From contig NC_043006.1 in NCBI RefSeq assembly GCF_006345805.1, forward strand, positions 105,828,737-105,892,736: a DNA stretch of 64,000 bases, read 5' to 3'. Both the position numbers and the translations under genes were made by a program. The notes beneath the pieces are model-generated. The model had not been told where the DNA came from and searched no databases. It saw only the letters and a list, made by a program, of their open reading frames with translations. Positions 29,216 through 49,700 of the stretch are shown piece by piece. Each line of letters starts with the position of its first letter. Position 1 is the first letter of the stretch. This DNA is from Octopus sinensis (Eukaryota).

Positions 29216-30292
29216 TAACCACATAGGACTGCAAAAATATCTACTTCAGAAGGAAGGAAAACTGATACAATAGCGGCAAAACCGAGCAAAACAAAAAGCT
29301 GTTCTCAGTATTTAAGGAGCTGACAAATACAACAAGAAATCATACCACCTAATAAACATGAAGAAGAAGATGAAGAAACAACAAAGATATAAACAAATGA
29401 AATCCAAACTAAAATAGAACAGCCACGAACCATGATAAAACGATGGCAAGAAAAGCCCCCTTCATGGTAAATACTGGACTAACTAAACGCAAAAGAAATA
29501 GACAAAGAAAAATCCCAGCATGGTTGAGAAGCTCAGGACTCAAGCAGAAACAGAGGGATTTTTAATTGCAGCACAAGACCAAAGCCTCCCCACCAGAAAT
29601 TACCAAAAGATGTAATGAAAAGAAATATTACAAGTAACTGCAGAATATGTGGAGATGGACAAGAAACAATAAATCATATTATCTCTAGCTGCCCAGTCCT
29701 GGCTAAGAAGGAATATATTCACAGACATGACAGAGTTGGAACCTACATACATTGGAAGCTATGCCAACATTATGGAATAACAACAGAAAAAAGATGGTAT
29801 AGGCACACACCGAAAAGGTCACAGAAAACGAGAAAAGCACCCATACTCTGGGATATGCCGGTACACACAGATAGAGAAATTAAGGCCAACAGACCAGATA
29901 TAGTTGTCAGAGATCATAGAAAAGAAAAACAATGCTTTCTAATTGATGTATCATACCGGCTGATGACAAGGTGTCTCTAAAGAAAAGGAGAAACTCTCAA
30001 AATACAAAGACCTGGAAATAGAGGTAACTAGAATGTGGAATCTGAAACAGAAACAATTCCTATCATAGTAGGTGCATTAGGCATGATAAAAAAATATTCA
30101 GACAATACATAACAAAACACCAGGACTTACAAACACATATAACATACAGAAATTGCACTACTAGGCAGTGCACACATCCTACGCAGAACGCTTTCCATAC
30201 AATAACCATCAGAGCATCACAGCACATACCCAAGGCACACAGAGCTGTGCTCGGTAGTGAAGGGAAAGCACGCTATAAAAATAAAACTACTG
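29211..30292 (+). mobile_element. Second 5'-truncated R4/Dong-clade copy in (TAA)n
   Basis: Highly similar to the reverse complement of 16127-17255; CRICGDGQETINHIISSC, RHD, RPDIVV; ends AAAACTACTG(AAT)n. Confidence 0.9.
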
Positions 30293-30619
30293 AATAATAA
30301 TAATAATAATAATAATTTTGGTGCAAGGCTAGTAATTGTAGAAGTAACTCTATTACATCGACACCTGTGCTTCACTGATACTTATTTATGAACACCGAAG
30401 AGATGACAGCATACCAGATTTCAAACCTCTAATATTTTTTTTTACATTTTATTTATCTGCAATCTGTGGTCATATTATATAAAAACTAAAATATTCTGAG
30501 CACAGTTTATTCTATCGACATAAAAAGACTTGGAAATACTGATCCTTGTCATGCAATTTTAGTTTAGATCTCACTTTAAAATTATATAGTAAACGCAAAC
30601 ATTCAGGCATGTTATATAT

Positions 30620-30830
30620 ATAGTCAATCCAACCATGAAAAATCAAGAAAAAGCAACAACGCAGGGACGTGGAATAAGCACAGTGTTATTGGACGCTCAG
30701 GAAAAGAAAGAAAAGAAAGAGGACTTCACGTTTCGAGCGGAACTCTTAATCAGAAATACAGGAAAAGTCCAAAGAAAGGAAGACGGACAAAAAAAATCGC
30801 CAACGATGCACCCCCGGTCACATATTGAAA
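30620..30830 (-). mobile_element. Penelope-type terminal-repeat fragment with decayed minimal hammerhead (30723-30757)
   Basis: Minus strand ATTT-CTGATTA-A-GAGT(TCC)GCTC-GAAA-CGT-G-AAGT; homologous to 41553-41760; (TA)n flanks. Confidence 0.65.
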
Positions 30831-30847
30831 ATATATACATATACATA

Positions 30848-30904
<57 letters not shown>

Positions 30905-30967
30905 CATATATATGTATATATATATATATATATAGATATATATATATATATATATATATCTATATAC

Positions 30968-31013
<46 letters not shown>

Positions 31014-31027
31014 ATATATGATGTATA

Positions 31028-31069
<42 letters not shown>

Positions 31070-31103
31070 ATATATATCTATATATTATATATACTACACC
31101 ACA

Positions 31104-31369
31104 AATTGCAGCGTGGAAGGTGTTTGTAAGCCATTTAAGAAACACACAAAAGCCGTTCGATTCACTTCAACATTTAAGTTTAATTTGTCAAAATATTTTC
31201 GTCGCTAAAATCCGCGACCTGTTCACTGCCAAAATCCGTGCTGCATCTCAGATGCAGCACGGATTTTTGTCAGTGAACAGGTCGCGGATTTTAGCGACGA
31301 AAATATTTTGAATCGAACGGCTTTTGTGTGTTTCTTAAATGGCTTACAAACACCTTCCACGCTGCAATT
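31104..31369. repeat. Near-perfect palindrome centred at 31249; each arm carries a G3-C8 variant hammerhead (31184-31233 minus, 31266-31311 plus)
   Basis: Arms are reverse complements except a 26-nt segment missing from the right arm; motif TTTG(T/G)CA-GTGAACA-G-GTCGC(GGATTTTA)GCGAC-GAAA-ATATTT-TGACAAA. Confidence 0.85.
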
Positions 31370-31447
31370 GTTTTTGTTTCAGCACACGATCTCAGATCAA
31401 ATCACTTGCTATGCGAGTACATCTCCGTAATATATATATATATATAT

Positions 31448-33261
31448 ATAAAATTAATTAAGGGTAGAAATTGATATTTATCAATTAAGACTAGTGGTCT
31501 AGCATATTAAAAAAAGAATCCGAAGATTAAAATATTTATATATACCAATTAAGGACTGAACACGAAAAGTGGACAGTCAACATGCTAGATATAGACGTCA
31601 AATCGCCATTCACCACAAAAGATTATGTTCTCAGATCAAACTCAACACAAAACCATAGCAATAAACAGTGAAAAATATACGAAATAAAATAATTACCCAT
31701 GTACTAAATTAGTTTCAGCTGTTATTTTCCGCAAGGAAACTGCAGCCATCATCAGCATGGTCCGTTATAAATGTAATTTGCTGGACTAGATGCAAACACG
31801 ATACCGAAATATCGCGTGCATGGAGTTCAGCCTATTACATTTGAATATATCTTTCAAATGCCTTTACTTTGGCGCGTTGGAACCCGAGAAAACTAGCCTG
31901 CAGCTAATAATTAGCAGCAGTTAATTTATCGGTTAGAGAACATATTTATTTATATAAAATTAATTAAGCACGCGATATTTCGGTATCGTGTTTGCATCTA
32001 GTCCAGCAAATTATATTTATAACGGACCATGCTGATGATGGCTGCAGTTTTCCTTGCGGAAAATAACAGCTGAAACTAATTTAGTACATGGGTAATTATT
32101 TTATTTCGTATATTTTTCACTTGTTTATTGCTATGGTTTTGTGTTGAGTTTGATCTGAGAACATAATCTTTTGTGGTGAATGGCGATTTGACGTCTATAT
32201 CTAGCATGTTGACTGTCCACTTTTCGTGTTCAGTCCTTAATTGGTATATATGAATATTTTTAATCTTCGGATTCTTTTTTTAATATGCTAGACCACTGGT
32301 CTTATTGATAAATATCAATTTCTAACCCTTAATTAATTTTATATAAATAAATATGTTCTCTAACCGATAAATTAACTGCTGCTAATTATTAGCTGCAGGC
32401 TAGTTTTCTCGGGTTCCAACGCGCCAAAGTAAAGGCATTTGAAAGATATATTCAAATGTATATAGCTGAACTCCATGCACGCGATATTTCGGTATCGTGT
32501 TTGCATCTAGTCCAGCAAATTACATTTATAACGGACCATGCTGATGATGGCTGCAGTTTTCCTTGCGGAAAATAACAGCTGAAACTAATTTAGTACATGG
32601 GTAATTATTTTATTTCGTATATTTTTCACTTGTTTATTGCTATGGTTTTGTGTTGAGTTTGATCTGAAACATAATCTTTTGTGGTGAATGGCGATTTGAC
32701 GTCTATATCTAGCATGTTGACTGTCCACTTTTCGTGTTCAGTCCTTAATTGGTATATATGAATATTTTAATCTTCGGATTCTTTTTTTAATATGCTAGAC
32801 CACTGGTCTTAATTGATAAATATCAATTTCTACCCTTAATTAATTTTATATAAATAAATATGTTCTCTAACCGATAAATTAACTGCTGCTAATTATTAGC
32901 TGCAGGCTAGTTTTCTCGGGTTCCAACGCGCCAAAGTAAAGGCATTTGAAAGATATATTCAAATGTAATAGGCTGAACTCCATGCACGCGATATTTCGGT
33001 ATCGTGTTTGCATCTAGTCCAGCAAATTACATTTATAACGGACCATGCTGATGATGGCTGCAGTTTTCCTTGCGGAAAATAACAGCTGAAACTAATTTAG
33101 TACATGGGTAATTATTTTATTTCGTATATTTTTCACTTGTTTATTGCTATGGTTTTGTGTTGAGTTTGATCTGAGAACATAATCTTTTGTGGTGAATGGC
33201 GATTTGACGTCTATATCTAGCATTTTGACTGTCCACTTTTCGTGGTCAGTCCTTAATTGGT

Positions 33262-33265
<4 letters not shown>
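31448..33265. mobile_element. Hammerhead tandem array 1 (retrozyme-like): ~508-bp unit, one inverted copy plus ~2.5 direct copies
   Basis: HHRs at 31697-31760 (-), 32027-32091, 32536-32600, 33043-33107 (+): CCATG-CTGATGA-T-GGCTG...CAGCT-GAAA-CTA(ATT)TAG-TA-CATGG; inversion junction at 31968/31969. Confidence 0.9.
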
Positions 33266-33317
<52 letters not shown>

Positions 33318-33369: not shown

Positions 33370-33520
33370 ATATACGTTCACTGCACTCATTTTTGCCAGC
33401 TGAGTGAACCGGAGCAATGTGAAATAAAGTGTCTTGCTCAAGGACACAACGCGTCACCGGGAATTGAACTTACGATCTTCAAATCGTGAGCCGAATACCC
33501 TAACCACTAAGGCATGCGCC
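33370..33520 (-). mobile_element. SINE family D, 5' part
   Basis: Reverse complement of GGCGCATG..TAGTGGTTAGGG...GTAAGTTCAATTCCCGG...CTTGAGCAAGACACTTTATTTCAC. Confidence 0.65.
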
Positions 33521-33565
33521 TTCACCAGACACACACACACACGCATACACACACATGGAGATATG

Positions 33566-33613
<48 letters not shown>

Positions 33614-33753
33614 ATATAATATATATAACTATATATATTTATTTAAAATTGAGGATAAAATCTTTATAAGAAATTATCAGTAGTTAGCGTGAAAACCTCG
33701 TAAGAGAAAAAATCCGTAAATTTTTCCACTTTGAAAATGTTTAATTATATTAT

Positions 33754-34218
33754 ATAGAGGGTACTACTATTCATAGATACCGCACGCTATGAGGGACCCT
33801 TGCGGTCAAAACTACTAAAATAAACAAATTGTACCGAATGCAAAACTTCAAACCAAGTCATTTAAAAAAGGAATTTAGTTACATATCACCTGTGATTTCG
33901 CAATTAATGCAGAATATGCATTCTATGCTCATCAGTGCAACAAACTCAAGACATAACAAAAAACATAACATTACAAACCCGACAGCCAACCGTAGAATTC
34001 GTCGTAGCATGTACGAATGTTTATCTTTACATATCTATGAAAATGGCGGGCTTATTCGCAATGCACTGCGGTAACAAATTGCTTACTGGGAACAAAAATT
34101 CAGTATCGAACTATTCCGGTGAAAAATATATTTAAATTATAAATTTGTTTATTTTAGTAGTTTTGACTGCAATGGTCCCTCCTAGCGTGCGGTATCTATG
34201 ACTAGTAGTACCCTCTAT
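33754..34218. mobile_element. MITE with ~80-bp terminal inverted repeats in TA context
   Basis: 33747-33830 and 34142-34224 are reverse complements with 4 mismatches; ~310-bp non-coding interior. Confidence 0.75.
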
Positions 34219-34222
34219 ATAA

Positions 34223-34311
<89 letters not shown>

Positions 34312-34626: not shown

Positions 34627-34669
<43 letters not shown>

Positions 34670-34721
34670 ATATATATATATATATATAATATATATATAT
34701 ATATATAATATATATATATAT

Positions 34722-37700
34722 ATCAACAATCAAGGAACGGCCATAATAGGCCATTCACCCACTAGAAATAACAGCCAAAGCTTCAACCGCAATAAAATTA
34801 ATTCCGTAAACCAGGAGAAAATTTAAAAAACATTTACCCTGTAATTTCTTATACGATGCACCGTTTCATCTGCTGTTTAATGGTAAACTAACCTGATTAA
34901 ATTAAATCAAACCAATCTTCCATAAGCCCTCAGATTCTTCAGTAAGAAATAGCCCAAGTCGGAACAGATATTTTCACGAGGCATTTCCGACCCTGCCAAG
35001 TAATATCTGACCTAAAATTTTCAAATCGTCGCACTCGCGCCAAATTTATCGGCAGCAAATAAATATAAGCCGTCGATTCCATTACGGAATTAACCAGAAA
35101 ATTCATAATTAATCAATATAGGGTGGCAAAAAAATTTTGTAGAATTTTTTTGCCACCAGCGGCCTAGAGGGAAAAAATTAAATAGTCATAGACCATTTTT
35201 AAGTTCAACATCAACAATCAAGGAACGGCCATAATAGGCCATTCACCCACTAGAAATAACAGCCAAAGCTTCAACCGCAAATAAAAATTAATTCCGTAAA
35301 CCAGGAGAAAATTTAAAAAACATTTACCCTGTAATTTCTTATACGATGCACCGTTTCATCTGCTGTTTAATGGTAAACTAACCTGATTAAATTAAATCAA
35401 ACCAATCTTCCATAAGCCCTCAGATTCTTCAGTAAGAAATAGCCCAAGTCGGAACAGATATTTTCACGAGGCATTTCCGACCCTGCCAAGGTAATATCTG
35501 ACCTAAAATTTTCAAATCGTCGCACTCGCGCCAAATTTATCGGCAGCAAATAAATATAAGCCGTCGATTCCATTACGGAATTAACCAGAAAATTCATAAT
35601 TAATCAATATAGGGTGGCAAAAAAAAATTTTGTAGAATTTTTTTGCCACCAGCGGCCTAGAGGGAAAAAATTAAATAGTCATAGACCATTTTTAAGTTCA
35701 ACATCAAAAATCAAGGAACGGCCATAATAGGCCATTCACCCACTAGAAATAACAGCCAAAGCTTCAACCGCAAATAAAAATAATTCCGTAAACCAGGAGA
35801 AAATTTAAAAAACATTTAACCTGTAATTTCTTATACGATGCACCGTTTCATCTGCTGTTTAATGGTAAACTAACCTGATTAAATTAAATCAAGCCAATCT
35901 TCCATAGGCCCTCAGATTCTTCAGTAAGAAATAGCCCAAGTCGGAACAGATATTTTCACGAGGCATTTCCGACCCTGCCAAGGTAATATCTGACCTAAAA
36001 TTTTCAAATCGTCGCTGGTGGCAAAAAAATTCTACAAAATTTTTTTTTGCCACCCTATATTGATTAATTATGAATTTTCTGGTTAATTCCGTAATGGAAT
36101 CGACGGCTTATATTTATTTGCTGCCGATAAATTTGGCGCGAGTGCGACGATTTGAAAATTTTAGGTCAGATATTACCTTGGCAGGGTCGGAAATGCCTCG
36201 TGAAAATATCTGTTCCGACTTGGGCTATTTCTTACTGAAGAATCTGAGGGCCTATGGAAGATTGGCTTGATTTAATTTAATCAGGTTAGTTTACCATTAA
36301 ACAGCAGATAAAACGGTGCATCGTATAAAAATTACAGGGTAAATGTTTTTTAAATTTTCTCCTGGTTTACGGAATTAATTTTTATTTGCGGTTGAAGCTT
36401 TGGCTGTTATTTCTAGTGGGTGAATGGCCTATTATGGCCGTTCCTTGATTGTTGATGTTGAACTTAAAAATGGTCTATGACTATTTAATTTTTTCCCACT
36501 AGGCCGCGGGTGGCAAAAAAATTCTACAAAATTTTTTTTGCCACCCTATATTGATTAATTATGAATTTTCTGGTTAATTCCGTAATGGAATCGACGGCTT
36601 ATATTTATTTGCTGCCGATAAATTTGGCGCGAGTGCGACGATTTGAAAATTTTAGGTCAGATATTACCTTGGCAGGGTCGGAAATGCCTCGTGAAAATAT
36701 CTGTTCCGACTTGGGCTATTTCTTACTGAAGAATCTGAGGGCCTATGGAAGATTGGCTTGATTTAATTTAATCAGGTTAGTTTACCATTAAACAGCAGAT
36801 GAAACGGTGCATCGTATAAGAATTACAGGGTAAATGTTTTTTAAATTTTCTCCTGGTTTACGGAATTAATTTTTATTTGCGTTTGAAGCTTTGGCTGTTA
36901 TTTCTAGTGGGTGAATGGCCTATTATGGCCGTTCCTTGATTGTTTATGTTGAACTTAAAAATGGTCTATGATATTTAATTTTTTCCCACTAGGCCGCTGG
37001 TGGCAAAAAAATTCTACAAAATTTTTTTTGCCACCCTATATTGATTAATTATGAATTTTCTGGTTAATTCCGTAATGGAATCGACGGCTTATATTTATTT
37101 GCTGCCGATAAATTTGGCGCGAGTGCGACGATTTGAAAATTTTAGGTCAGATATTACCTTGGCAGGGTCGGAAATGCCTCGTGAAAATATCTGTTCCGAC
37201 TTGGGCTATTTCTTACTGAAGAATCTGAGGGCCTATGGAAGATTGGCTTGATTTAATTTAATCAGGTTAGTTTACCATTAAACAGCAGATGAAACGGTGC
37301 ATCGTATAAGAAATTACAGGGTAAATGTTTTTTTAATTTTTCTCCTGGTTTACGGAATTAATTTTTATTTGCGTTTGAAGCTTTGGCTGTTATTTCTAGT
37401 GGGTGAATGGCCTATTATGGCCGTTCCTTGATTGTTGATGTTGAACTTAAAAATGGTCTATGACTATATAATTTTTTCCCACTAGGCCGCTGGTGGCAAA
37501 AAAATTCTACAAAATTTTTTTGCCACCCTATATTGATTAATTATGAATTTTCTGGTAATTCCGTAATGGAATCGACGGCTTATATTTATTTGCTGCCGAT
37601 AAATTTGGCGCGAGTGCGACGATTTGAAAATTTTAGGTCAGATATTACCTTGGCAGGGTCGGAAATGCCTCGTGAAAATATCTGTTCCGACTTGGGCTAT

Positions 37701-40700
37701 TTCTTACTGTAGAATCTGAGGGCCTATGGAAGATTGGCTTGATTTAATTTAATCAGGTAGTTTACCATTAAACAGCAGATGAAACGGTGCATCGTATAAG
37801 AAATTACAGGGTAAATGTTTTTTTAATTTTCTCCTGGTTTACGGAATTATTTTTATTTGCGGTTGAAGCTTTGGCTGTTATTTCTAGTGGGTGAATGGCC
37901 TATTATGGCCGTTCCTTGATTGTTGATGTTGAACTTAAAAATGGTCTATGACTATTTAATTTTTTCCCACTAGGCCGCTGGTGGCAAAAAAAATCTACAA
38001 AATTTTTTTTTTTTTTTTGCCACCCTTTATTAATTAATTATGAATTTTCTGGTTAATTCCGTAATGGAATCGACGGCTTATATTTATTTGCTGCCGATAA
38101 ATTTGGCGCGAGTGCGACGATTTGAAAATTTTAGGTCAGATATTACCTTGGCAGGGTCGGAAATGCCTCGTGAAAATATCTGTTCCGACTTGGGCTATTT
38201 CTTACTGAAGAATCTGAGGGCCTATGGAAGATTGGCTTGATTTAATTTAATCAGGTTAGTTTACCATTAAACAGCAGATGAAACGGTGCATCGTATAAGA
38301 AATTACAGGGTAAATGTTTTTTAAATTTTCTCCTGGTTTACGGAATTAATTTTTATTTGCGGTTGAAGCTTTGGCTGTTATTTCTAGTGGGTGAATGGCC
38401 TATTATGGCCGTTCCGTGATTGTTGATGTTGAACTTAAAAATGGTCTATGACTATTTAATTTTTTTCCACTAGGCCGCTGGTGGCAAAAAAATTCTACAA
38501 AATTTTTTTTTACCACCCTATATTGATTAATTATGAATTTTCTGGTTAATTCCGTAATGGAATCGACGGCTTATATTTATTTGCTGCCGATAAATTTGGC
38601 GCGAGTGCGACGATTTGAAAATTTTAGGTCAGATATTACCTTGGCAGGGTCGGAAATGCCTCGTGAAAATATCTGTTCCGACTTGGGCTATTTCTTACTG
38701 AAGAATCTGAGGGCCTATGGAAGATTGGCTTGATTTAATTTAATCAGGTTAGTTTACCATTAAACAGCAGATGAAACGGTGCATCGTATAAGAAATTACA
38801 GGGTAAATGTTTTATAAATTTTCTCCTGTTTACGGAATTAATTTTTATTTGCGGTTGAAGCTTTGGCTGTTATTTCTAGTGGGTGAATGGCCTATTATGG
38901 CCGTTCCTTGATTGTTGATGTTGAACTTAAAAATGGTCTATGACTATTTAATTTTTTCCCACTAGGCCGCTGGTGGCAAAAAATTTCTACAAAATTTTTT
39001 TTTGCGACCCTATATTGATTAATTATGAATTTTCTGGTTAATTCCGTAATGGAATCGACGGCTTATATTTATTTGCTGCCGATAAATTTGGCGCGAGTGC
39101 GACGATTTGAAAATTTTAGGTCAGATATTACCTTGGCAGGGTCGGAAATGCCTCGTGAAAATATCTGTTCCGACTTGGTCTATTTCTTACTGAAGAATCT
39201 GAGGGCCTATGGAAGATTGGCTTGATTTAATTTAATCAGGTTAGTTTACCATTAAACAGCAGATGAAACGGTGCATCGTATAAGAAATTACAGGGTAAAT
39301 GTTTTTTTAATTTTTTCCTGGTTTACGGAATTAATTTTTATTTGCGGTTGAAGCTTTGGCTGTTATTTCTAGTGGGTGAATGACCTATTATGGCCGTTCC
39401 TTGATTGTTGATGTTGAACTTAAAAATGGTCTATGACTATTTAATTTTTTCCCACTAGGCCGCTGGTGGCAAAAAAATTCTACAAAATTTTTTTTTGCGA
39501 CCCTATATTGATTAATTATGAATTTTCTGGTTAATTCCGTAATGGAATCGACGGCTTATATTTATTTGCTGCCGATAAATTTGGCGCGAGTGCGACGATT
39601 TGAAAATTTTAGGTCAGATATTACCTTGGCAGGGTCGGAAATGCCTCGTGAAAATATCTGTTCCGACTTGGGCTATTTCTTACTGAAGAATCTGAGGGCC
39701 TATGGAAGATTGGCTTGATTTAATTTAATCAGGTTAGTTTACCATTAAACAGCAGATGAAACGGTGCATCGTATAAGAAATTACAGGGTAAATGTTTTTT
39801 AAATTTTCTCCTGGTTTACGGAATTAATTTTTATTTGCGGTTGAAGCTTTGGCTGTTATTTCTAGTGGTGAATGGCCTATTATGGCCGTTCCTTGATTGT
39901 TGATGTTGAACTTAAAAATGGTCTATGACTATTTAATTTTTTCCCACTAGGCCGCTGGTGGCAAAAAAATTCTACAAAATTTTTTTTTGCCACCCTATAT
40001 TGATTAATTATGAATTTTCTGGTTAATTCCGTATTGGAATCGACGGCTTATATTTATCTGCTGCCGATAAATTTGGCGCGAGTGCGACGATTTGAAAATT
40101 TTAGGTCAGATATTACCTTGGCAGGGTCGGAAATGCCTCGTGAAAATATCTGTTCCGACTTGGGCTATTTCTTACTGAAGAATCTGAGGGCCTATGGAAG
40201 ATTGGCTTGATTTAATTTAATCAGGTTAGTTTACCATTAAACAGCAGATGAAACGGTGCATCGTATAAGAAATTACAGGTAAATGTTTTTTAAATTTTCT
40301 CCTGTTTACGGAATTAATTTTTATTTGCGGTTGAAGCTTTGGCTGTTATTTCTAGTGGGTGAATGGCCTATTATGGCCGTTCCGTGATTGTTGATGTTGA
40401 ACTTAAAAATGGTCTATGACTATTTAATTTTTTCCCACTAGGCCGCTGGTGGCAAAAAAATTCTACAAAATTTTTTTTTGCCACCCTATATTGATTAATT
40501 ATGAATTTTCTGGTTAATTCCGTAATGGAATCGACGGCTTATATTATTTGCTGCCGATAATTTGGCGCGAGTGCGACGATTTGAAAATTTTAGGTCAGAT
40601 ATTACCTTGGCAGGGTCGGAAATGCCTCGTGAAAATATCTGTTCCGACTTGGGCTATTTCTTACTGAAGAATCTGAGGGCCTATGGAAGATTGGCTTGAT

Positions 40701-41476
40701 TTAATTTAATCAGGTTAGTTTACCATTAAACAGCAGATGAAACGGTGCATCGTATAAGAAATTACAGGGTAAATGTTTTTTAAATTTTCTCCTGGTTTAC
40801 GGAATTAATTTTTATTTGCGGTTGAAGCTTTGGCTGTTATTTCTAGTGGGTGAATGGCCTATTATGGCCGTTCCTTGATTGTTGATGTTGAACTTAAAAA
40901 TGGTCTATGACTATTTAATTTTTTCCCACTAGGCCGCTGGTGGCAAAAAATTTCTACAAAATTTTTTTTTGCGACCCTATATTGATTAATTATGAATTTT
41001 CTGGTTAATTCCGTAATGGAATCGACGGCTTATATTTATTTGCTGCCGATAAATTTGGCGCGAGTGCGACGATTTGAAAATTTTAGGTCAGATATTACCT
41101 TGGCAGGGTCGGAAATGCCTCGTGAAAATATCTGTTCCGACTTGGGCTATTTCTTACTGAAGAATCTGAGGGCCTATGGAAGATTGGCTTGATTTAATTT
41201 AATCAGGTTAGTTTACCATTAAACAGCAGATGAAACGGTGCATCGTATAAGAAATTACAGGGTAAATGTTTTTTAAATTTTCTCCTGGTTTACGGAATTA
41301 ATTTTTATTTGCGGTTGAAGCTTTGGCTGTTTTTTCTAGTGGTGAATGGCCTATTATGGCCGTTCCTTGATTGTTGATGTTGAACTTAAAAACGGTCTAT
41401 GACTATTTAATTTTTTCCCACTAGGCCGCTGGTGGCAAAAAATTCTACAAAATTTTTTTTTGCCACCCTATATTGA

Positions 41477-41484
<8 letters not shown>
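34722..41484. mobile_element. Hammerhead tandem array 2 (retrozyme-like): ~491-bp unit, ~2.6 minus-sense plus ~11 plus-sense copies
   Basis: Each unit has TTTCTTA-CTGAAGA-ATCTG...CAGAT-GAAA-CGGTGCATCG-TA-TAAGAAA; minus HHRs start at 34845, 35335, 35827; plus HHRs at 36228, 36719, 37209, 37700, 38198, 38691, 39183, 39676, 40168, 40657, 41150; junction at ~36013-36015. Confidence 0.95.
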
Positions 41485-41541
<57 letters not shown>

Positions 41542-41552
41542 TGTATATCTAT

Positions 41553-41760
41553 ATAGTTAATCCAAACATGAAAACACAAAGAGAAAACACAACAACGCGA
41601 GGACGTGGAACAAATATAGTATTATTGGACGCACAGGAAGGAAGGAAAGAAGGAGGGTTTAACGTTCCGAGCGGAGCTCTTCGTCAGAAACATAGGAAAA
41701 CGAAAGATTCGAAGAAGGAAAGATGGAGGAAAAAATCGCCAACGGTACACACGCGGATGA
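41553..41760 (-). mobile_element. Penelope-type terminal-repeat fragment with minimal hammerhead (41657-41691, one core change)
   Basis: Minus strand GTTT-CTGACGA-A-GAGC(TCC)GCTC-GGAA-CGT-T-AAAC; homologous to 30620-30830. Confidence 0.7.
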
Positions 41761-42414: not shown

Positions 42415-45400
42415 TAGAATGGCGCTTAGGCAGAATTATTAACCCGCCGATCAAAATGGTTAGCAGTATTCCTTCCGGCTTTACGTTCTGAGTTCAAATT
42501 CCACTGAGTTCTACTTTGCTTTCAGTGCGCATAAAATAAGTACAAGTTAAGCACTGTAGTCGATGTAATCGAATGGTCCCCTCAATATTTCGGGCCGTGT
42601 GCCTATAAGAGAAACAATAACCATAGCTTCTAGTACCAACATCATTATCTCTGCAGTTATTACCTCCGCCTTATAGAAGGCGGAGGTATTGTTTTCAGTC
42701 GTGTTTGTCTGTGGACAAGATATCTCAAGAACCGCCGGATAGATTTGGATGGAACTTTCAGGGATGTTTGACCTCGTGACTGGCCCGAACGGATTAGATT
42801 CTGGGATCGATCTGGTACCGGACAAGGATTCTGGTTACTACTGTTATCATTACCTGGCGGAAGAAAGGCGGTGAGCTTGCAGAATCGTTAGTGTACAAAA
42901 TACCTAATGCCATTTCTTCCGGCTTTACTCTCGGATTTCAAATACCGCCGAGGTCGTCTTTACCTTTCATCCTTTTGATGTCGATGAAATAAATTCCAGT
43001 TAAGCACGGGGATCGATGTTATTGACTTCGTCCTCCCACTAAAAAAATCTATGTCAATACTAGAAAAGATTAGATAGTGAGAGAGTAGTGACTTGAGGTA
43101 ATCATTAGAGTATCGAATAAAATATGTTGTGGTGTATATACTGTCTCTATATTTTGAGCTCAAATTTCACCAAAGCGAACTTTGCCTTTCATCCTTACCA
43201 GTAGTCATGTGTTTGTCTCAAAGCTTAACCCTGTGAGCCCGTAACACCGCTTTACCGGTAGATGGCTTATTTTTCTCTATACCATAGCACCGATCTATAC
43301 CGTATCACCAGTAGAGTGCCAGGTATATGGTCAAATAAGGTTCTGGAGGCCAGGGCTCAAAGGGTTAAGTCAGTTGAATCAATTAACTTCGTTCTCATCC
43401 AAATTTGTGACCTCCCAATTATATTTCTTTCTACTATAGGCACAACATAAAGTCGACCTCGGTAGAACTTGAAATCAGAATGTGAAATGAAATTATGAAT
43501 GACCGCTGAACGTTTTGTCATTGTGTCCGGATCGATAACGATTCTGCCAGCTCGCCGCTTTGTCTTCTACTTATCTTCTTTCTACTTTAGGCACAATGCC
43601 TGAAATTTTATGGGTGGCGTAAAGTCATTTTCATCGATACCCAGTGCTTGACAGATATTTATTTTATCGACCTCCGAAAAGATGAATAGTGTAGTCGACC
43701 TCGGCGGAATTCGAACTCGGAAAGCAAAACCGGAAAAAAATACCGCTAAGCAATTTTCCTTACGATGAAACGATTCTGCCAGCCCACCGCTGTCTTCCAC
43801 TTCAATTGATTTCTAATTCTGGCACAAGGTCAGCAATTTCAGGGGAATGTGTAAGTCGATTATATCGACTCCAGTAATCAACTGGTACTTATTATATCGA
43901 ATCCGAAAAAAATGTCAGACGAAATGCCGTTAAGAAATTTGTTCGGCATTCTAACGATTCGTTTCTACTCTAGGAACAAGGCCCGAAATTTTGGGGGAGG
44001 CGGTCAATCGATTAGATTGACCCCAGTACGCAACTGGTACTTAATTTATCGACCCCTAAAGGCTGAAAGGCAAAGTCAACCGCGGCGGAATTTGAACTCA
44101 GAACGTAAAGACAGACGAAATAACGCTAAGCATTTCGCCCGGCGTTCTAACGTTTCTGCCAGCTCGCCGCCTTCCCCCTGGCAAAATATGGGTTTCAAAT
44201 TTCGGCGCAAGGCCAGTAATTTCAGGCGAGAGAATAATATGATTACATCAACACCCCCACCACTGTTTAACTGGTACTTATTTTATCATCCCAGAAAAGA
44301 TGAAAGGCAAAGTCGACCTCACCGGAGTGTAAAGACGGATGAAATGTAGCTAAGCAATTTTTCCGGCATGCTAACGATTCTGCTAGCTCACTGCTCCTTC
44401 AATGTCAGAAAATTATAAATTGTTATTACATTGATCTAGTTGACGAGCTAGATAGTTAGCGTGTGGGACAAAATGCTTAGCATTTCATTATGTTCTGAGT
44501 TCAAATGCCGCGGAGGTCGACTTTACTTATCACCTCTTTAAGGTTCATTATATAAGTCGCAATCAAGTTCTATAATCGATATAATCTACATTGGCCCTAC
44601 CTCTCAAAAATTGCTGATCTTTTGCCAAAATATTAAAACTATCGTTAATATTGGTTTCAAATTTTGACACTAGGCCAGCCATTTCGGGACAGAGAATAAG
44701 TCGATTATATCGACCCCAGTGCTCAACTGGTACTTATTTTATCGCCCGTGAAAGGGTGGAAGGCAAAGTCGACCTCGGCAGAATTTCAATTCCGAACGTA
44801 AAACCATCATTAACATTAGCTCCAGGTTTTCCCTGGTGCACCATGTCTACGATAAATGGCATTTCATTCGTAACCTTCCCGTTTCTTTCCGTGCGTCAGC
44901 GGTACCAGGAAGGACAAAATCTTTTTTGTCTTTTGGCTTGGTTTTGTAGCGGTGGTGGGTGGTCTGCTTCTGAAACAGCTGGTGTTTGCTCAGAGGGAGA
45001 TTCGACTGCTTTATCTAGCAACCCAGATCAATCACATATGAGCTTCCTCAAACAATGTTATTTTTGCTGTTATTATTTCTTATTGTTAAGGTGGCGTGCT
45101 AGCAGAATCGTTAGGACGGCGGACGAAATCCTTAGTGATATTTCGTCTGCCGCTACGTTCTGAGTTCAAATTCTGCCAAGGTCGACTTTGCCTTTCATCC
45201 TTCCGGGGTCGATTAAATAAGTACCAGTTACGGACTGGTGTCGATATAATCGACTTAATCCGTTTGTCTGTCCTTGTTTGTCCTTTCTGTGATTAGCCCC
45301 TTGTGGGTAGTGAAAAAATAGGTATTTCGTCTGCCGATACGTTCTGAGTTCAAATTCCGCCGAGGGCGACTTTGCCTTTCATCCTTTCGGGGTCGATAAA

Positions 45401-45850
45401 TTAAGTACCAGTTACGCACTGGGGTCGCTGTAATCGACTTAATCCCTTTATCTATCTTTGTTTGTCCCCTCTGTTTAGTCCCTTGTGGGCAATAAAGAAA
45501 TAAGAATCGTTAAGACGCCGGGTAGAATGCTTAGTGGCAATTCGTCCGCCTTTACATTCTGAGTGCAAACTACATCGAGGCCGACTTTACTTTCGGAGTC
45601 GATAAATAAAGCACCAGTAAAACACTGAGGTTGATGTAATCGACTAGTCCCCACCCCCAAATTTCAGGCCTTGCAGAATCGTTAACACGCCGGGCAAAAT
45701 TTGTAGCGACATTTCGTCCGTCTTACCGTTCTGACTTCAAATTCCCCTGAGGTCGATTATTCTTTCGAGGTCGATGTAATCGACTAGTGCCCCCACCCAC
45801 AGAATTTGAAACCTTGTGCCTATAGCAGAAAGTATCATTTCTTAGAGTTA
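42415..45850. mobile_element. Dense cluster of SINE family B copies in both orientations, with a HINE-like fragment at 42660-42860
   Basis: More than ten recurrences of GAGTTCAAATT..GAGGTCGAC..GCCTTTCATCC or its reverse complement. Confidence 0.8.
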
Positions 45851-46767: not shown

Positions 46768-49700
46768 ATTATTCAGTTTATTTCAAGATTTCTTGCCAAT
46801 AAAGAGCCGGTTTCTAACCTAGATCCAAGGCTCCTTCAATGGAATTTCAACATCAACAACAGGGTATTTTTGTTCGTCTGTCTGTCTGTCCGTATGTCTG
46901 TATGTATGCATACATGTATGTATGTATGTATGTATGTATGTATGTATGTATGTATGTGCAGATTTGTATGTTTTATGTATGTATTCTCATGCATATAGTT
47001 ACATATCTAGACATGCTCATATATATTTAAATGATAAACTTCTGGAAAGTTATTACAGATTTTTACAGTTCCAGTGATGGATTGGATATGTAGACTTCGA
47101 ATTAGCTTTCTACTTTCTGGTTTTGAGAGGCCTAATTTCTCAATATTGGTATTTAGGCAGTGTGTTACATATACCAGGGTCCCAATAATTACAGGTATAA
47201 TCCTGAAGTTGTAACCTAGATAGAGTAACTGTAGATTTTTCAATAGTTCAGCATAGGTGTTCTCTTTTTCACTGATCTTCAGTTTTATGTCAACATCCGC
47301 TGGGCAGCTAATTTCCACAACTGTGCACAGTTTCTATTCTCTATCCCAGATCATTATATCAGGTCTGTTTTACTTACATTTTATTGAGGTCTACACTGGA
47401 ACATTCCAACAGTATTCCTTTTTATTATGAGTGGCTATGGCTTCTACCATATTGTGTGTTCTTATTTCTTTGTCCTCGGAATTATCCTTCCGACGGATTT
47501 CATTATATGGTGTCCTAGCTACAACATCATGTAGATAAAACCGTGATGACATTTTCAGACAACTGCTTATGATGTGGATGATATCTTCGATGTTAACCCC
47601 AGAAAGCCTTCATCGTTTGTCACATTTTATTGCTTCCCTGCATCTCTATCCCTTTTGTGCATCAGGTACTAGGTTTATATTTCCTGTTCCTGGATTGCAA
47701 ACGCATACCCCTCAAAGTAGGAGGTAGTATTGGTCTATGATATACTGCTTTGATGATCGATGTTACTATCATCAGGGAGCTTTCAACTAACATATCCATG
47801 CTGAGTCTTCTGCTCATATAGGCTCATCCTTCATCTGATGATACGTTGCCGTAGAGTCGTGAGACTACTTTGGACATGTATTCTAGGTTATCAAAAGATG
47901 TTGCCCAAGGAGGTGCCTTCCAAGTCTTAAGATATTTTCAGCCTCGTATGCAAACTTGGTCAAGGGATGCACTTCGATACTTGGTGGTTAAAATATGTTG
48001 CCGAGGGGATATGATGCGACATTCAAAGGCATTTGGGGTCGATGTTAAGCCTCTGCCGTTTTGTTTTCGTTTTAGGGAGATGTGCTCTACGTCACTATTT
48101 ATGTAGAAATTATGTGTGCTTGTTAGAAAATCCGAAAACGGATTTTCACATCAATAGCTCGGATTTCATCAAGCGTCAATCAAGAAGCCCAGATGCTGGT
48201 ATGAGTACTGGCACTGCAAACACATTGTGGGCCACTGTTTTATTGAATGCAGAGAGTTCTGAGGTCCAAATTTTCTTTATTCGACTGTAATATTTTTTAG
48301 TGACACGTGTTTTGTTACAGGTGCCATTGTAAGATATATTTTCATCTACCCCTAGATACCTGTAACATTACTCTCAGATACATGGGAAACAGTCAAATCA
48401 TAGATGGAGATGTTACTAGTTTGGTTTATAGTTTTCCCCCTTTTCACAACCATATAACAACATTTATCCTGACCAAACTCCAACCCCACATCTTTTGAGA
48501 ATGTTGTAACTAGATCAAGGCTCTTTTTCATCTCATGCGTATTTTTTGCATAAAGTTTTAAGTCATCTACAAAGAAACAGTGTGTAATTTTGGTATTTCG
48601 GTTTCCTTGTGAACCAGGGAGATATCCTTCAGAATTCCTTAACATGAATGACAAGGGGTTTACAGAAAGTATAAACAACATCACAGAGAGGCTGTCTCCT
48701 TGCAATATGCCTTTGCGATACTGTATTCTATCGGTGATAATACAGTCACTCTTTGTGTTTAATTTCAAGATAGAGACCCACGATGAAGTCAGGTCAGCTA
48801 TGGCTTTAACTATTGTCACTGGAACTTTAGAAAGTTGAATGGCTTCAAGCATCTATGAGTGGGGAACAGAGTCAAAGGCTTTCTTGTAGTCTAGCCACAT
48901 TGAAACTATGTTCCACCTACGCTCGCGCACCTTTCACATCACAGTTTTTGTTAATTAATAATTTCTCGGCATATCCACAAACTCCCTTCCTCCCAAATGC
49001 TTGTTCTGCCGTGATAATATTGGTTTCACAATGGCCCTGGAGGAAGAGGTTTAAACATACTGTATATATCTTGTACATTAATTTCTGGCATGCAATTGGC
49101 CGGTAGTGTTTTTGCCATGCGGGTGTTTCTGCATCAGTGGATCAATTTTGTCTCTGTCAGAGCTAACCAGTGTGGTATGCAATTGTTCCCAATGAAAGCT
49201 TGCTGGTACAGATTGATAAGATAGGGTCGGTAGAATGTTAGCTTCTTGTACCAATATCCAACAATCAAGTCTCTTCCGCGTGCTTTTCCATCCTGGAGTT
49301 TCTGGATCACAGTTGCAAGAGTTTCACCATGAATGTTGTATGTCTTGGATGTAACGCAGGAGCAATACCTTTTTCGAATTTCTTCCAGCCACTGAGCATC
49401 TTGGTTAAATTCCTTCTCTTCAATCCAGATTTTCCTCCAGAAGGAGTCTATGTCTTCTCGTGAAGGAGCTTCCATGATATTCACTGCTCCTCCTCTCATG
49501 TCTCTGTGTACTGCTGCCTGCGGTTAAATTTTTTGTTTATTGTTCTTCTCTCTGTTATTCTCTTCTGATGTCGGAGTTTTTCACTGACAGTTTTTAGCTC
49601 CTGCTTGAGGATGATCTGTTTGCAAGTGAGTGTCCTCTTTTGCTCTCTCCAAGCATCTCTATCTCCTTTACTTTCTATTGGTCGGATGTATAGTGATTTG

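What the first reader, a model, noticed from the sequence alone, without database searches (positions are those of the whole stretch)
34722..41484. 6.8-kb array of ~491-bp units, each with a type I hammerhead ribozyme: candidate retrozyme/circRNA family
Seen: every unit has stem I TTTCTTA/TAAGAAA (7 bp), core CUGAAGA, stem II ATCTG/CAGAT, GAAA, stem III and a GUA triplet; 12 of 14 copies have intact cores. Predicted plus-strand cuts after 36816, 37306, 38295, 38788, 39280, 39773, 40265, 40754 and 41247 give ~489-493-nt monomers between adjacent intact sites. Established: tandem genomic repeats with one type I HHR per unit define non-LTR retrozymes, whose transcripts self-cleave to monomers that circularise. 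Inference: this apparent satellite is a self-processing RNA element, with a longer unit than the few-hundred-nt animal retrozymes I know and near-identical copies suggesting recent origin.
Basis: partly seen in the sequence, partly recalled or inferred. Interest (0 to 1): 0.93.

Follow-up and report, generated by a model that had tools for sequence, protein, structure and literature searches.

The report
Tandem repeat carrying hammerhead ribozymes
A 6.8-kb tandem repeat in an animal genome carries a complete self-cutting hammerhead RNA motif in each ~491-bp unit; it looks like a new family of the already known 'retrozyme' mobile elements, sitting in a TA microsatellite next to other elements of the same kind.

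Summary
Window 34722-41484 is a ~492-bp tandem array with 14 copies of a type I hammerhead (HHR) motif. A relaxed HHR descriptor found only these copies in the real window and gave 1 hit in 11.4 Mb of shuffled sequence, so chance is excluded.

- The array is two head-to-head arms: 2.6 units on the minus strand and 11.1 on the plus strand, joined at 36013-36015. Both 3' ends abut (TA)n.
- Helix II carries a 57-nt insert and its first pair is A-U. Rfam hammerhead models give no hit, even at E<=10.
- The window holds three more HHR-like loci. One is a second, unrelated 509-bp tandem family (31445-33267) with the same head-to-head, (TA)n-flanked layout.

This layout matches published Penelope-like element (PLE) insertions. 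It fits a non-LTR retrozyme: transcripts self-cleave to ~492-nt monomers, circularise, and are copied back by a PLE reverse transcriptase.

Cleavage, circles and mobility are inferred, not shown. No relatives were found in the searchable collections. Unit length is within the published range (51-972 bp). Verdict: a new member of a known kind, of moderate interest.

The parts
36013..41484 (+). Plus arm of the 491-bp family: 11.1 head-to-tail units. It runs from unit position 180 (5'-truncated) to unit position 238, where it meets (TA)n.
   Evidence: TRF period 492, 98% matches; end mapping; unit alignment.
34722..36015 (-). Minus arm: 2.6 inverted units. In RNA sense it runs from unit position 311 at window 36015 down to unit position 131 at window 34722, where it meets (TA)n.
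   Evidence: TRF row with reverse-complement consensus; GC/AT skew flips sign; sequence; end mapping.
36013..36015 (.). Head-to-head junction of the two 5'-truncated arms, with a 3-nt CGC overlap (microhomology).
38691..38795 (+). Representative intact type I HHR (105 nt). Stem I is UUUCUUA/UAAGAAA (8 bp with the flanking A-U) and the core is CUGAAGA. Helix II is AUCUG/CAGAU plus a 57-nt insert folding as internal loop, 4 bp, 14 bp and a hexaloop. Then GAA, helix III ACGG[UGCA]UCGU, and the cut after A17 at 38788. Other intact + copies: 36719-36823, 37209-37313, 38198-38302, 39183-39287, 39676-39780, 40168-40272, 40657-40761, 41150-41254.
35827..35931 (-). Intact HHR on the minus arm. The other two are at 35335-35439 and 34845-34949. 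Those two carry C->U at helix II position 41, opposite G60 (pairing kept as G-U), and C->U in an internal loop.
36228..36332 (+). Inactivated HHR copy: G12->A (GAAA->AAAA) and G->A in the 3' strand of stem I.
37700..37803 (+). Inactivated HHR copy: A6->U (CUGUAGA) and a 1-nt deletion in helix II. Cleavage at its neighbours would release a 989-nt dimer, 37307-38295.
34663..34723 (.). (TA)n microsatellite abutting the 3' end of the minus arm (...TTGAT|ATATAT on the RNA-sense strand).
41482..41555 (.). (TA)n/(TATG)n microsatellite abutting the 3' end of the plus arm (...TTAATTAT|ATATAT).
31445..33267 (.). Second, unrelated HHR-bearing tandem family with a 509-bp unit and the same layout. The minus arm is 31445-31968 (about 1.03 units) and the plus arm 31968-33267 (2.55 units). 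The arms are joined head to head, and both 3' ends abut (TA)n. HHR-like motifs lie at 32027-32091, 32536-32600 and 33043-33107 (+) and 31697-31760 (-).
   Evidence: self-BLAST; sequence; motif scan; ends; coordinates
33746..34226 (-). A ~480-bp element with 85-bp terminal inverted repeats (33746-33830 / 34142-34226). It reads as a short inverted 3' fragment plus one copy. An HHR-like motif lies at 33878-33941 (-): GUUGCA-CUGAUGA-GCA...UGC-GAA-AUCA[CAGG]UGAU-A|UGUAAC.
20722..20885 (+). A 164-bp block between two (TA)n tracts with a compact 43-nt type I HHR-like motif at 20750-20792: CCAC-CUGAAGA-UUGUC[GAUCAA]GACAA-GAA-AC[GAUU]GU-A|GUGG.

Best explanation
The array is a non-LTR retrozyme, that is, a non-autonomous retroelement that carries a hammerhead ribozyme.

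Proposed mechanism:
1. Each arm is transcribed on its HHR strand (+ for 36013-41484, - for 34722-36015), giving a multimeric RNA.
2. In each unit the two stem I strands, 98 nt apart, pair around a canonical hammerhead core with a long helix II arm and a 4-bp helix III hairpin.
3. The RNA cuts itself after the A of GUA. This releases 489-493-nt monomers with 5'-OH and 2',3'-cyclic phosphate ends.
4. A host RNA ligase of the RtcB type closes the monomers into compact circular RNAs.
5. Circles or multimers serve as templates for a reverse transcriptase supplied in trans by a Penelope-like element. That element's endonuclease targets (TA)n.
6. Priming on both sides of the break gives two 5'-truncated multimeric arms, joined head to head, with their 3' ends facing outward into the microsatellite.

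Shown here: the motif, its statistical significance, its compatibility with the predicted fold, the tandem organisation and the insertion geometry.

Inferred: transcription, cleavage, circularisation and PLE-mediated mobilisation.
For: - Complete HHR. All invariant positions are present (C3 U4 G5 A6 N7 G8 A9, G12 A13 A14, A15.1-U16.1, H17=A), with helix I open (type I), in 12 of 14 copies.
- Not chance. Shuffles gave 1 relaxed-descriptor hit in about 11.4 Mb, and the real window has none outside the array.
- Fold. The HHR-constrained fold is -30.1 kcal/mol against an MFE of -31.6, and the MFE already contains stems I and II. The 109-nt region has z=-4.4.
- One polarity only. No HHR is found on the opposite strand of the unit, and no other ribozyme class is found by Rfam.
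- Retrozyme features. The array is a head-to-tail tandem with 35.8% GC. The circular monomer MFE is -132.9 kcal/mol (z=-4.1), and the HHR strand is G+U-rich and folds far better than its complement at -93.3. The only recurring ORF (66 aa) has no homologue among 5.8 billion proteins.
- Insertion signature. The arms are 5'-truncated and head to head with a 3-nt microhomology, and both 3' ends lie in (TA)n. The unrelated 509-bp HHR family 3 kb upstream has the same layout.
- Match to published PLE insertions: partial tandems, an inverted 5'-truncated copy at the 5' end, and (TA)n targets for some clades (PMC8557442). Retrozyme-PLE links are reported in PMC7229834 and the 2026 preprint 10.64898/2026.07.22.740005.
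- HHR enrichment. Three further independent HHR-like loci lie in the 57-kb background, against 0.235 expected. Two pass the stricter I>=5/III>=4 test, against 0.025 expected.
- The 509-family minus arm spans the cut site and is 1.03 units long, so its template was circular or multimeric.
Against: - No Rfam hammerhead model matches, at gathering score or at E<=10.
- The 10.1-11.1 pair is A-U, not the highly conserved G-C. PMC3088659 calls it the most conserved pair after 15.1-16.1.
- Helix II carries a 57-nt insert, so the usual loop 1-loop 2 tertiary contacts cannot be recognised.
- Copies within the array show no HHR-specific conservation (p=0.32). Only one structure-preserving change was seen.
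- No relatives were found in the metagenome or viral collections, so there is no covariation test.
- No PLE ORF was found among the window ORFs tested.
- There are no expression data.
- Units differ by 3-21 positions, and some variants are shared by units 3-4 apart. Part of the array may therefore have grown by DNA-level unequal exchange.
Confidence: 0.7

Rival explanations
1. It is now an ordinary satellite. The repeat may descend from a retrozyme or a PLE pseudo-LTR, but at this locus it is maintained and expanded only by DNA-level unequal crossing-over. The HHR is an untranscribed or inactive relic that looks intact only because the copies are young.
For: - The HHR is no better conserved than the rest of the unit (p=0.32).
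- Copies are 98% identical, so 12 of 14 intact cores is close to the neutral expectation.
- Variants shared by non-adjacent units suggest block duplication.
- Rfam is negative and the 10.1-11.1 pair is non-consensus.
Against: - All invariant core positions and all three helices are intact in the family consensus.
- The head-to-head 5'-truncated arms with outward 3' ends in (TA)n are a retrotransposition signature, not one of unequal exchange. The same signature recurs in an unrelated HHR family.
- Wherever metazoan HHR tandem repeats were tested, they were transcribed and circularised (PMC7229834).
Confidence: 0.2
2. It is the tandem pseudo-LTR part of an autonomous Penelope-like element, not an independent non-autonomous retrozyme. 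The HHR would then be the PLE's own pLTR ribozyme.
For: PLE pLTRs carry HHRs and form tandem or inverted structures. In Xenopus, retrozymes cluster with PLE pLTRs.
Against: - There is no RT or GIY-YIG ORF in or next to the array. Both ends run directly into (TA)n.
- The array has 11 full units rather than a partial tandem.
- PLE HHRs are described as minimal variants, whereas this one has a 4-bp helix III and a long helix II.
Confidence: 0.06
3. The hammerhead resemblance is a chance match inside an AT-rich satellite.
For: Rfam models do not score it.
Against: Three other HHR-like motifs lie in similar (TA)n-flanked blocks.
Confidence: 0.02

Closest known systems
Metazoan non-LTR retrozymes (Cervera & de la Pena 2020, PMC7229834: coral, mussel, axolotl)
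   Same: One type I HHR per unit. Head-to-tail tandem repeats from dimers to large multimers. Low GC. Non-coding. Strongly self-paired monomers. A proposed link to PLEs.
   Different: Helix II is about 24 bp long with a 57-nt insert, instead of a short capped stem. The 10.1-11.1 pair is A-U. The unit (491 bp) is above the 170-400 nt circles of that paper, but inside the 51-972 bp range of the 2026 preprint. The head-to-head arms and (TA)n target documented here are not mentioned in that paper's main text (a term search found no occurrence of 'inverted' or 'microsatellite').
pDo500 satellite of Dolichopoda cave crickets (PMC2837043)
   Same: A satellite with a ~500-bp unit, one hammerhead per unit, and transcripts processed by the HHR.
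   Different: The pDo500 HHR is a compact 49-nt motif with a C1.1-G2.1 pair next to the core and a G10.1-C11.1 pair. Here the equivalents are U1.1-A2.1 and A10.1-U11.1, and the motif is 105 nt. It is not the same family.
Penelope-like element insertions (Craig et al. 2021, PMC8557442)
   Same: Partial or multiple tandems, an inverted 5'-truncated copy at the 5' end, and insertion into (TA)n microsatellites.
   Different: There is no RT/GIY-YIG ORF, so the element would have to be mobilised in trans. It has many full units rather than one pLTR.
Newt satellite 2 and Schistosoma SM-alpha hammerhead repeats
   Same: Type I HHRs in dispersed or tandem repeats a few hundred bp long in animal genomes.
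   Different: Amphibian HHRs have a 1-2-bp helix III and work as dimers. This one has a 4-bp helix III and should be able to act as a single motif. That last point is an inference.
Plant LTR retrozymes (PMC4918200)
   Same: Non-autonomous retroelements whose transcripts are cut by HHRs and circularised.
   Different: Plant elements use type III HHRs within LTRs, have a PBS and PPT, are GC-rich, and rely on Gypsy-type mobilisation.

Membership tests
Hammerhead ribozyme, type I | Invariant core C3 U4 G5 A6 N7 G8 A9 / G12 A13 A14 / A15.1-U16.1 / H17 | tested here: met
   CUGAAGA ... GAA ... A-U closing helix III, GUA|U; present in 12 of 14 copies.
Hammerhead ribozyme, type I | Three helices around the core, with helix I open and helices II and III closed | tested here: met
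   Stem I is 7-8 bp, helix II is 5 bp plus an extended arm, helix III is 4 bp with a UGCA loop. The constrained fold lies within 1.5 kcal/mol of the MFE.
Hammerhead ribozyme, type I | Conserved G10.1-C11.1 pair at the base of helix II | tested here: not met
   The pair is A10.1-U11.1: a Watson-Crick pair but not the consensus. PMC3088659 reports natural active variants at this pair.
Hammerhead ribozyme, type I | Match to the curated covariance models (Rfam hammerhead families) | tested here: not met
   No hit at gathering score or at E<=10 on the 7.4-kb region. The likely cause is the 57-nt helix II insert, but that cause was not tested.
Hammerhead ribozyme, type I | Loop 1-loop 2 tertiary contacts or a pseudoknot that stabilise the active fold | tested here: inconclusive
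   Internal loops exist 5 bp into helix II and about 8 bp into stem I (a UAC bulge), but no recognisable contact could be assigned.
Hammerhead ribozyme, type I | Site-specific self-cleavage | not testable with these tools
   Needs in vitro transcription and a Mg2+ assay.
Metazoan non-LTR retrozyme | Head-to-tail tandem repeats with one type I HHR per unit | tested here: met
   11.1 + 2.6 units, period 489-493 bp, one HHR each.
Metazoan non-LTR retrozyme | Unit of a few hundred bp and low GC (<45-50%) | tested here: met
   The unit is 492 bp with 35.8% GC. The published range is 51-972 bp.
Metazoan non-LTR retrozyme | Non-coding; no LTR, PBS or PPT | tested here: met
   The only recurring ORF is 66 aa and has no homologues. 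The ends run straight into (TA)n. PBS and PPT were not searched for specifically.
Metazoan non-LTR retrozyme | Monomer RNA highly self-paired | tested here: met
   Circular MFE is -132.9 kcal/mol, z=-4.1 against dinucleotide shuffles, with 58% of bases paired.
Metazoan non-LTR retrozyme | Expressed as linear and circular monomer RNAs | not testable with these tools
   No transcriptome of the source organism is available here.
Metazoan non-LTR retrozyme | Co-occurrence with Penelope-like elements in the genome | tested here: inconclusive
   Ten window ORFs gave only LINE-type endonuclease and RT domains and no GIY-YIG. A 64-kb window cannot show absence from the genome.
PLE-type insertion architecture | Tandem copies with an inverted 5'-truncated copy at the 5' end, in a microsatellite target | tested here: met
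   Arms start at unit positions 180 and 311 and are joined head to head with a CGC overlap. Both 3' ends lie in (TA)n. The 509-bp family has the same layout.
pDo500 cave-cricket HHR satellite | Compact 49-nt HHR with C1.1-G2.1 and G10.1-C11.1 | tested here: not met
   Here the motif is 105 nt with U1.1-A2.1 and A10.1-U11.1 (one search compared).

The most novel reading that the evidence does not exclude
A ~21-kb stretch of this window (20.7-41.6 kb) records three or four independent insertions of unrelated hammerhead-bearing elements into TA microsatellites. Two of them are multimers built as head-to-head, 5'-truncated arms with outward-facing 3' ends, and one arm spans the ribozyme cut site. 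Read together, this would be direct structural evidence that animal retrozymes integrate by a Penelope-type, double-primed reverse transcription of circular or multimeric RNA at (TA)n. It would also mean that hammerheads with very long helix II arms, invisible to Rfam models, make such elements under-counted. A read-through transcript across the head-to-head junction would fold into a ~1.3-kb hairpin dsRNA. That could feed small-RNA silencing of the family.
Probability: 0.35. Interest if true: 0.6.

Novelty: new member of a known kind. Interest (0 to 1): 0.45.

Why it matters
Retrozymes are a recently recognised source of abundant ribozyme-made circular RNAs in animals, and how they integrate is still argued by correlation with Penelope-like elements.

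- This locus adds a family whose hammerhead escapes the standard covariance models. Surveys based on Rfam will therefore miss relatives.
- It shows insertion geometry that matches PLE-type integration: (TA)n target, head-to-head 5'-truncated arms, and a template spanning the cut site. That turns the PLE hypothesis into something testable genome-wide in the source species.
- The two naturally inactivated copies (G12A and A6U) are ready-made negative controls for a cleavage assay.

It does not change the known picture of what such elements are.

Tried and rejected
- Rfam scans. I ran the whole window at gathering score and E<=10 scans over the array, the compact motif and 31.4-34.4 kb. There was no hammerhead or other ribozyme hit, only microsatellite-driven miRNA look-alikes.
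- Pattern scans of public collections. CTGAAGAATCTG-N40-70-CAGATGAAAC gave 31 metagenome and 2 viral hits. All are unrelated, apparently protein-coding, sequences, none completes an HHR, and I count them as chance matches. No relatives were obtained, so no covariation test was possible.
- The 66-aa ORF repeated in each unit. It has no homologue, so the coding reading was dropped.
- Organism identification. A LINE ORF gave a best unnamed hit at 82% and named hits (crustaceans, cod) at only 45-48%. The contig and cluster look-ups gave no names. My impression that the abundant tRNA-like SINE resembles cephalopod SINEs is memory only and untested.
- Global alignment of the 491- and 509-bp units. 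It is not convincing, so I treat the families as unrelated apart from the HHR core.
- Within-array conservation test. The HHR is not specifically conserved, so this cannot be used as evidence of selection.
- pDo500 identity was rejected on HHR features.
- The bacterial promoter/terminator scan is irrelevant for a eukaryotic locus.

Full report

Yes. Tandem Repeats Finder reports a 492-bp period with 98% matches. It comes as two adjoining rows, 34722-36015 (2.6 copies) and 36013-41484 (11.1 copies), whose consensus units are reverse complements of each other. GC and AT skew change sign at the boundary.

It occurs 14 times, 11 on the + strand and 3 on the - strand.

Twelve copies are intact. The copy at 36228-36332 has G12->A and a G->A in stem I. 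The copy at 37700-37803 has A6->U and a 1-nt deletion in helix II.

Spacings between adjacent sites are 489-493 nt.

The "array" is two arms joined head to head.

**2. Is it more than chance?**

I wrote a deliberately relaxed type I descriptor:
- stem I of at least 5 bp
- CUGANGA
- helix II of at least 4 bp with up to about 80 nt enclosed
- GAAA
- helix III of at least 3 bp closed by A-U
- H17, with G-U pairs allowed

In the real window it finds only the 12 intact copies. In 100 dinucleotide-preserving shuffles of the 57-kb non-array background, on both strands (about 11.4 Mb), it finds one. The observed motif is stronger than those thresholds, with stem lengths of 8, 5 and 4 bp. A chance origin is excluded for practical purposes.

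**3. Anatomy of the ribozyme**

In standard numbering the motif reads:
- Stem I 5' strand: U2.7-A2.1.
- Core: C3 U4 G5 A6 A7 G8 A9.
- Helix II: A10.1 UCUG ... CAGA U11.1.
- Core: G12 A13 A14.
- Helix III: A15.1 CGG [UGCA] UCG U16.1.
- Cleavage: after A17.
- Stem I 3' strand: U1.1 AAGAAA.

Every invariant position is present. Helix I is the open one, so the motif is type I.

RNAfold's unconstrained MFE for the 116-nt region already contains stem I and helix II. Forcing the complete hammerhead costs only 1.5 kcal/mol (-30.1 against -31.6). The 109-nt region folds with z=-4.4 against shuffles.

Three features are unusual.

- First, helix II is not a short capped stem. After 5 bp comes an internal loop, then 4 bp, then a 14-bp hairpin, for a 57-nt insert.
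- Second, the 10.1-11.1 pair is A-U rather than G-C. Perreault et al. describe it as the most conserved pair after 15.1-16.1, though natural active variants exist (PMC3088659).
- Third, no Rfam hammerhead model scores the motif, at gathering threshold or at E<=10 on the 7.4-kb region.

I attribute the Rfam failure to the long insert, but I could not test that. It remains evidence against, or at least an absence of support.

Only one polarity carries a ribozyme, and Rfam detects no other ribozyme class.

**4. The unit as an RNA**

The cut-to-cut monomer is 492 nt with 35.8% GC. Folded as a circle, it has an MFE of -132.9 kcal/mol (z=-4.1).

The HHR strand is G+U-rich and folds much better than its complement (-93.3 kcal/mol), as expected if this strand is the functional RNA.

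Each unit has a 66-aa ATG ORF, but it has no homologue among 5.8 billion proteins. I treat the unit as non-coding.

The HHR strand contains runs of up to nine T. From general knowledge these would terminate Pol III, so multimeric transcripts would have to come from Pol II or read-through. That is an inference.

**5. Architecture and surroundings**

Mapping the ends on a cut-to-cut unit gives:

| Arm | 5' start (RNA sense) | 3' end |
|---|---|---|
| Plus | unit position 180, window 36013 | unit position 238, window 41484 |
| Minus | unit position 311, window 36015 | unit position 131, window 34722 |

The two 5'-truncated arms overlap by 3 nt (CGC). Both 3' ends run straight into (TA)n tracts, as ...TTAATTAT|ATAT and ...TTGAT|ATAT.

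Self-BLAST of the left flank revealed a second tandem family that TRF missed because its period is 509 bp. It spans 31445-33267 and has the same layout:
- a ~1.03-unit inverted arm, 31445-31968
- a 2.55-unit direct arm, 31968-33267
- a head-to-head junction
- both 3' ends in (TA)n

This family is not alignable to the 491-bp unit. Even so, each copy carries CCAUG-CUGAUGA-U-GGCUG...CAGCU-GAA-ACUA[AUU]UAGU-A|CAUGG. That is a hammerhead-like motif with an extra U after A9, a G-U first pair and, again, a long helix II.

Its inverted arm runs from unit position 242 through the cut site to position 259. Its template was therefore circular or multimeric, not a cleaved linear monomer.

Two further HHR-like motifs turned up:
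- A compact 43-nt motif at 20750-20792, inside a 164-bp block between two (TA)n tracts.
- A motif at 33878-33941 (-), inside a ~480-bp element whose 85-bp terminal inverted repeats read as a short inverted 3' fragment plus one copy.

With a loose descriptor (I>=4, III>=2, helix II not tested), shuffles give 0.235 hits per background, and the real background has three independent loci. At I>=5/III>=4 the expectation is 0.025 and two loci are observed.

Seven of the eight ends of these four elements directly abut (TA)n.

**6. What this matches**

Craig et al. 2021 describe Penelope-like element insertions as follows. They are highly 5'-truncated and organised in partial tandems. [quoted passage not shown] (TA)n is the preferred target for the Naiad and Hydra clades (PMC8557442).

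Cervera & de la Pena 2020 define metazoan non-LTR retrozymes. They are type I HHRs in low-GC tandem repeats of 150-450 bp, from dimers to large multimers. They are transcribed, self-cleaved, ligated (RtcB in vitro) into highly self-paired circRNAs, and co-occur with PLEs (PMC7229834).

A 2026 preprint reports retrozyme consensus lengths of 51-972 bp and sequence relatedness to PLE pseudo-LTRs.

The present array meets every sequence-level criterion of a retrozyme and shows PLE-type insertion geometry. It lacks any RT or GIY-YIG ORF, and the window ORFs tested are LINE-type. It would therefore be mobilised in trans.

**7. Mechanism proposed (confidence about 0.7)**

1. Transcription of an arm on its HHR strand.
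2. Folding of each hammerhead.
3. Cleavage after GUA.
4. Release of ~492-nt monomers, or a 989-nt dimer across the dead 37700 copy.
5. Ligation to circles.
6. Reverse transcription by a PLE enzyme primed at a cleaved (TA)n target, on both sides of the break.
7. The result is multimeric, 5'-truncated, head-to-head arms.

Shown: the motif, the statistics, fold compatibility, the tandem organisation and the geometry. Inferred: every RNA-level step and the identity of the mobilising enzyme.

**8. Caveats and rivals**

Within the array the HHR is not more conserved than the rest of the unit (7+5 differences in 1498 cells against 62 in 5396, p=0.32). The 3' 200 columns as a whole vary four times less than the 5' 300 (p=5e-7), partly because homopolymer indels concentrate in the 5' part.

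Only one substitution event is informative. C->U opposite G in helix II keeps a G-U pair on the HHR strand.

Units differ by 3-21 positions, and some variants recur 3-4 units apart. DNA-level exchange has therefore also shaped the array.

The rivals are:
- A "relic satellite" reading (about 0.2), which cannot be dismissed without RNA data.
- A PLE pseudo-LTR reading (about 0.06), weakened by the absence of any ORF and by both ends lying in (TA)n.
- Chance (about 0.02).

**9. Searches that gave nothing**

A pattern scan for the core plus helix II base found 31 metagenome and 2 viral loci. All are unrelated, apparently protein-coding, sequences, none completes an HHR, and I count them as chance matches. 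No orthologous or paralogous copies were available, and covariation could not be tested.

The source organism could not be named.

The cricket pDo500 satellite, the closest match by unit length, has a different, compact HHR.

**10. Verdict**

The element belongs to a known kind, and its unit length is not exceptional.

Three results go beyond the finding:
- the Rfam-invisible long-helix-II hammerhead
- the head-to-head, (TA)n-targeted architecture
- the clustering of several unrelated HHR elements in one microsatellite-rich stretch

Interest is 0.45. Novelty: a new member of a known kind.

Noticed in passing
window 31445-33267: A second tandem family (509-bp unit, about 98% identity between copies) that TRF missed because its period exceeds 500. 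It is built like the reported array: an inverted ~1-unit arm plus 2.55 direct units, flanked by (TA)n. Each copy carries a hammerhead-like motif with an extra U after A9 and a G-U first pair in helix II.
   Followed up: yes
window 20722-20885 (motif 20750-20792, +): A 164-bp block between two (TA)n tracts containing a compact 43-nt type I hammerhead-like motif, with a 4-bp stem I, 5-bp helix II and 2-bp helix III. Rfam gives no hit even in a 301-nt search.
   Followed up: partly
window 33746-34226 (motif 33878-33941, -): A ~480-bp element with 85-bp terminal inverted repeats (95% identical). It carries a CUGAUGA...GAAA hammerhead-like motif with G10.1-C11.1, a 4-bp helix III and a 6-bp stem I. 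It could be a MITE, or an inverted 3' fragment plus one retrozyme-like copy.
   Followed up: partly
window 31097-31375: A near-perfect ~270-bp palindrome lying between (AT)n at 30831-31093 and (TA)n at about 31431. No hammerhead motif was found in it. It might be another head-to-head insertion product.
   Followed up: no
units of the 491- and 509-bp families: The two otherwise unalignable families share the 12-mer GTGGTGAATGGC at almost the same distance from the cut site (unit positions 92 and 87). Three of the four arm 3' ends have CCTTRATT 6-9 nt before the junction with (TA)n. This could be a cis signal for the mobilising enzyme, or coincidence.
   Followed up: partly
window 36070-36270 and the same frame in most units: A 66-aa ATG ORF recurs in the least variable half of the unit and overlaps the 5' part of the hammerhead. 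It has no homologue in the protein collection.
   Followed up: yes
window 42430-45760, also about 3830-4210, 12580-12830, 14530-14770, 18430-19100, 53120-53280, 54630-55680: More than 20 copies (about 70-88% identity) of a ~150-180-bp SINE-like repeat, some in tandem (45139-45489, period 184). A tRNA-like sequence lies at 33386-33525 (-).
   Followed up: no
window 5319-5930, 7384-7953, 16223-17037, 29615-29980, 48352-48852: Fragments of LINE-type retrotransposons (Exo_endo_phos_2, RVT_1 and zf-RVT domains). A CENP-B_N/pogo-like fragment lies at 61017-61424. No GIY-YIG or PLE domain was found among the ORFs tested.
   Followed up: partly
window 30609-30817 and 41541-41756: Two same-strand copies (76% identity) of a ~215-bp repeat. 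One sits just left of the (AT)n at 30831 and the other just right of the (TA)n at 41555, so they bracket the whole microsatellite and HHR-element cluster.
   Followed up: no
window 15419-16126, 17585-17834, 18206-18428, 56577-57790: Very long (ATT)n/(TTA)n trinucleotide microsatellites, up to 404 repeats. Overall the window is extremely dense in microsatellites.
   Followed up: no
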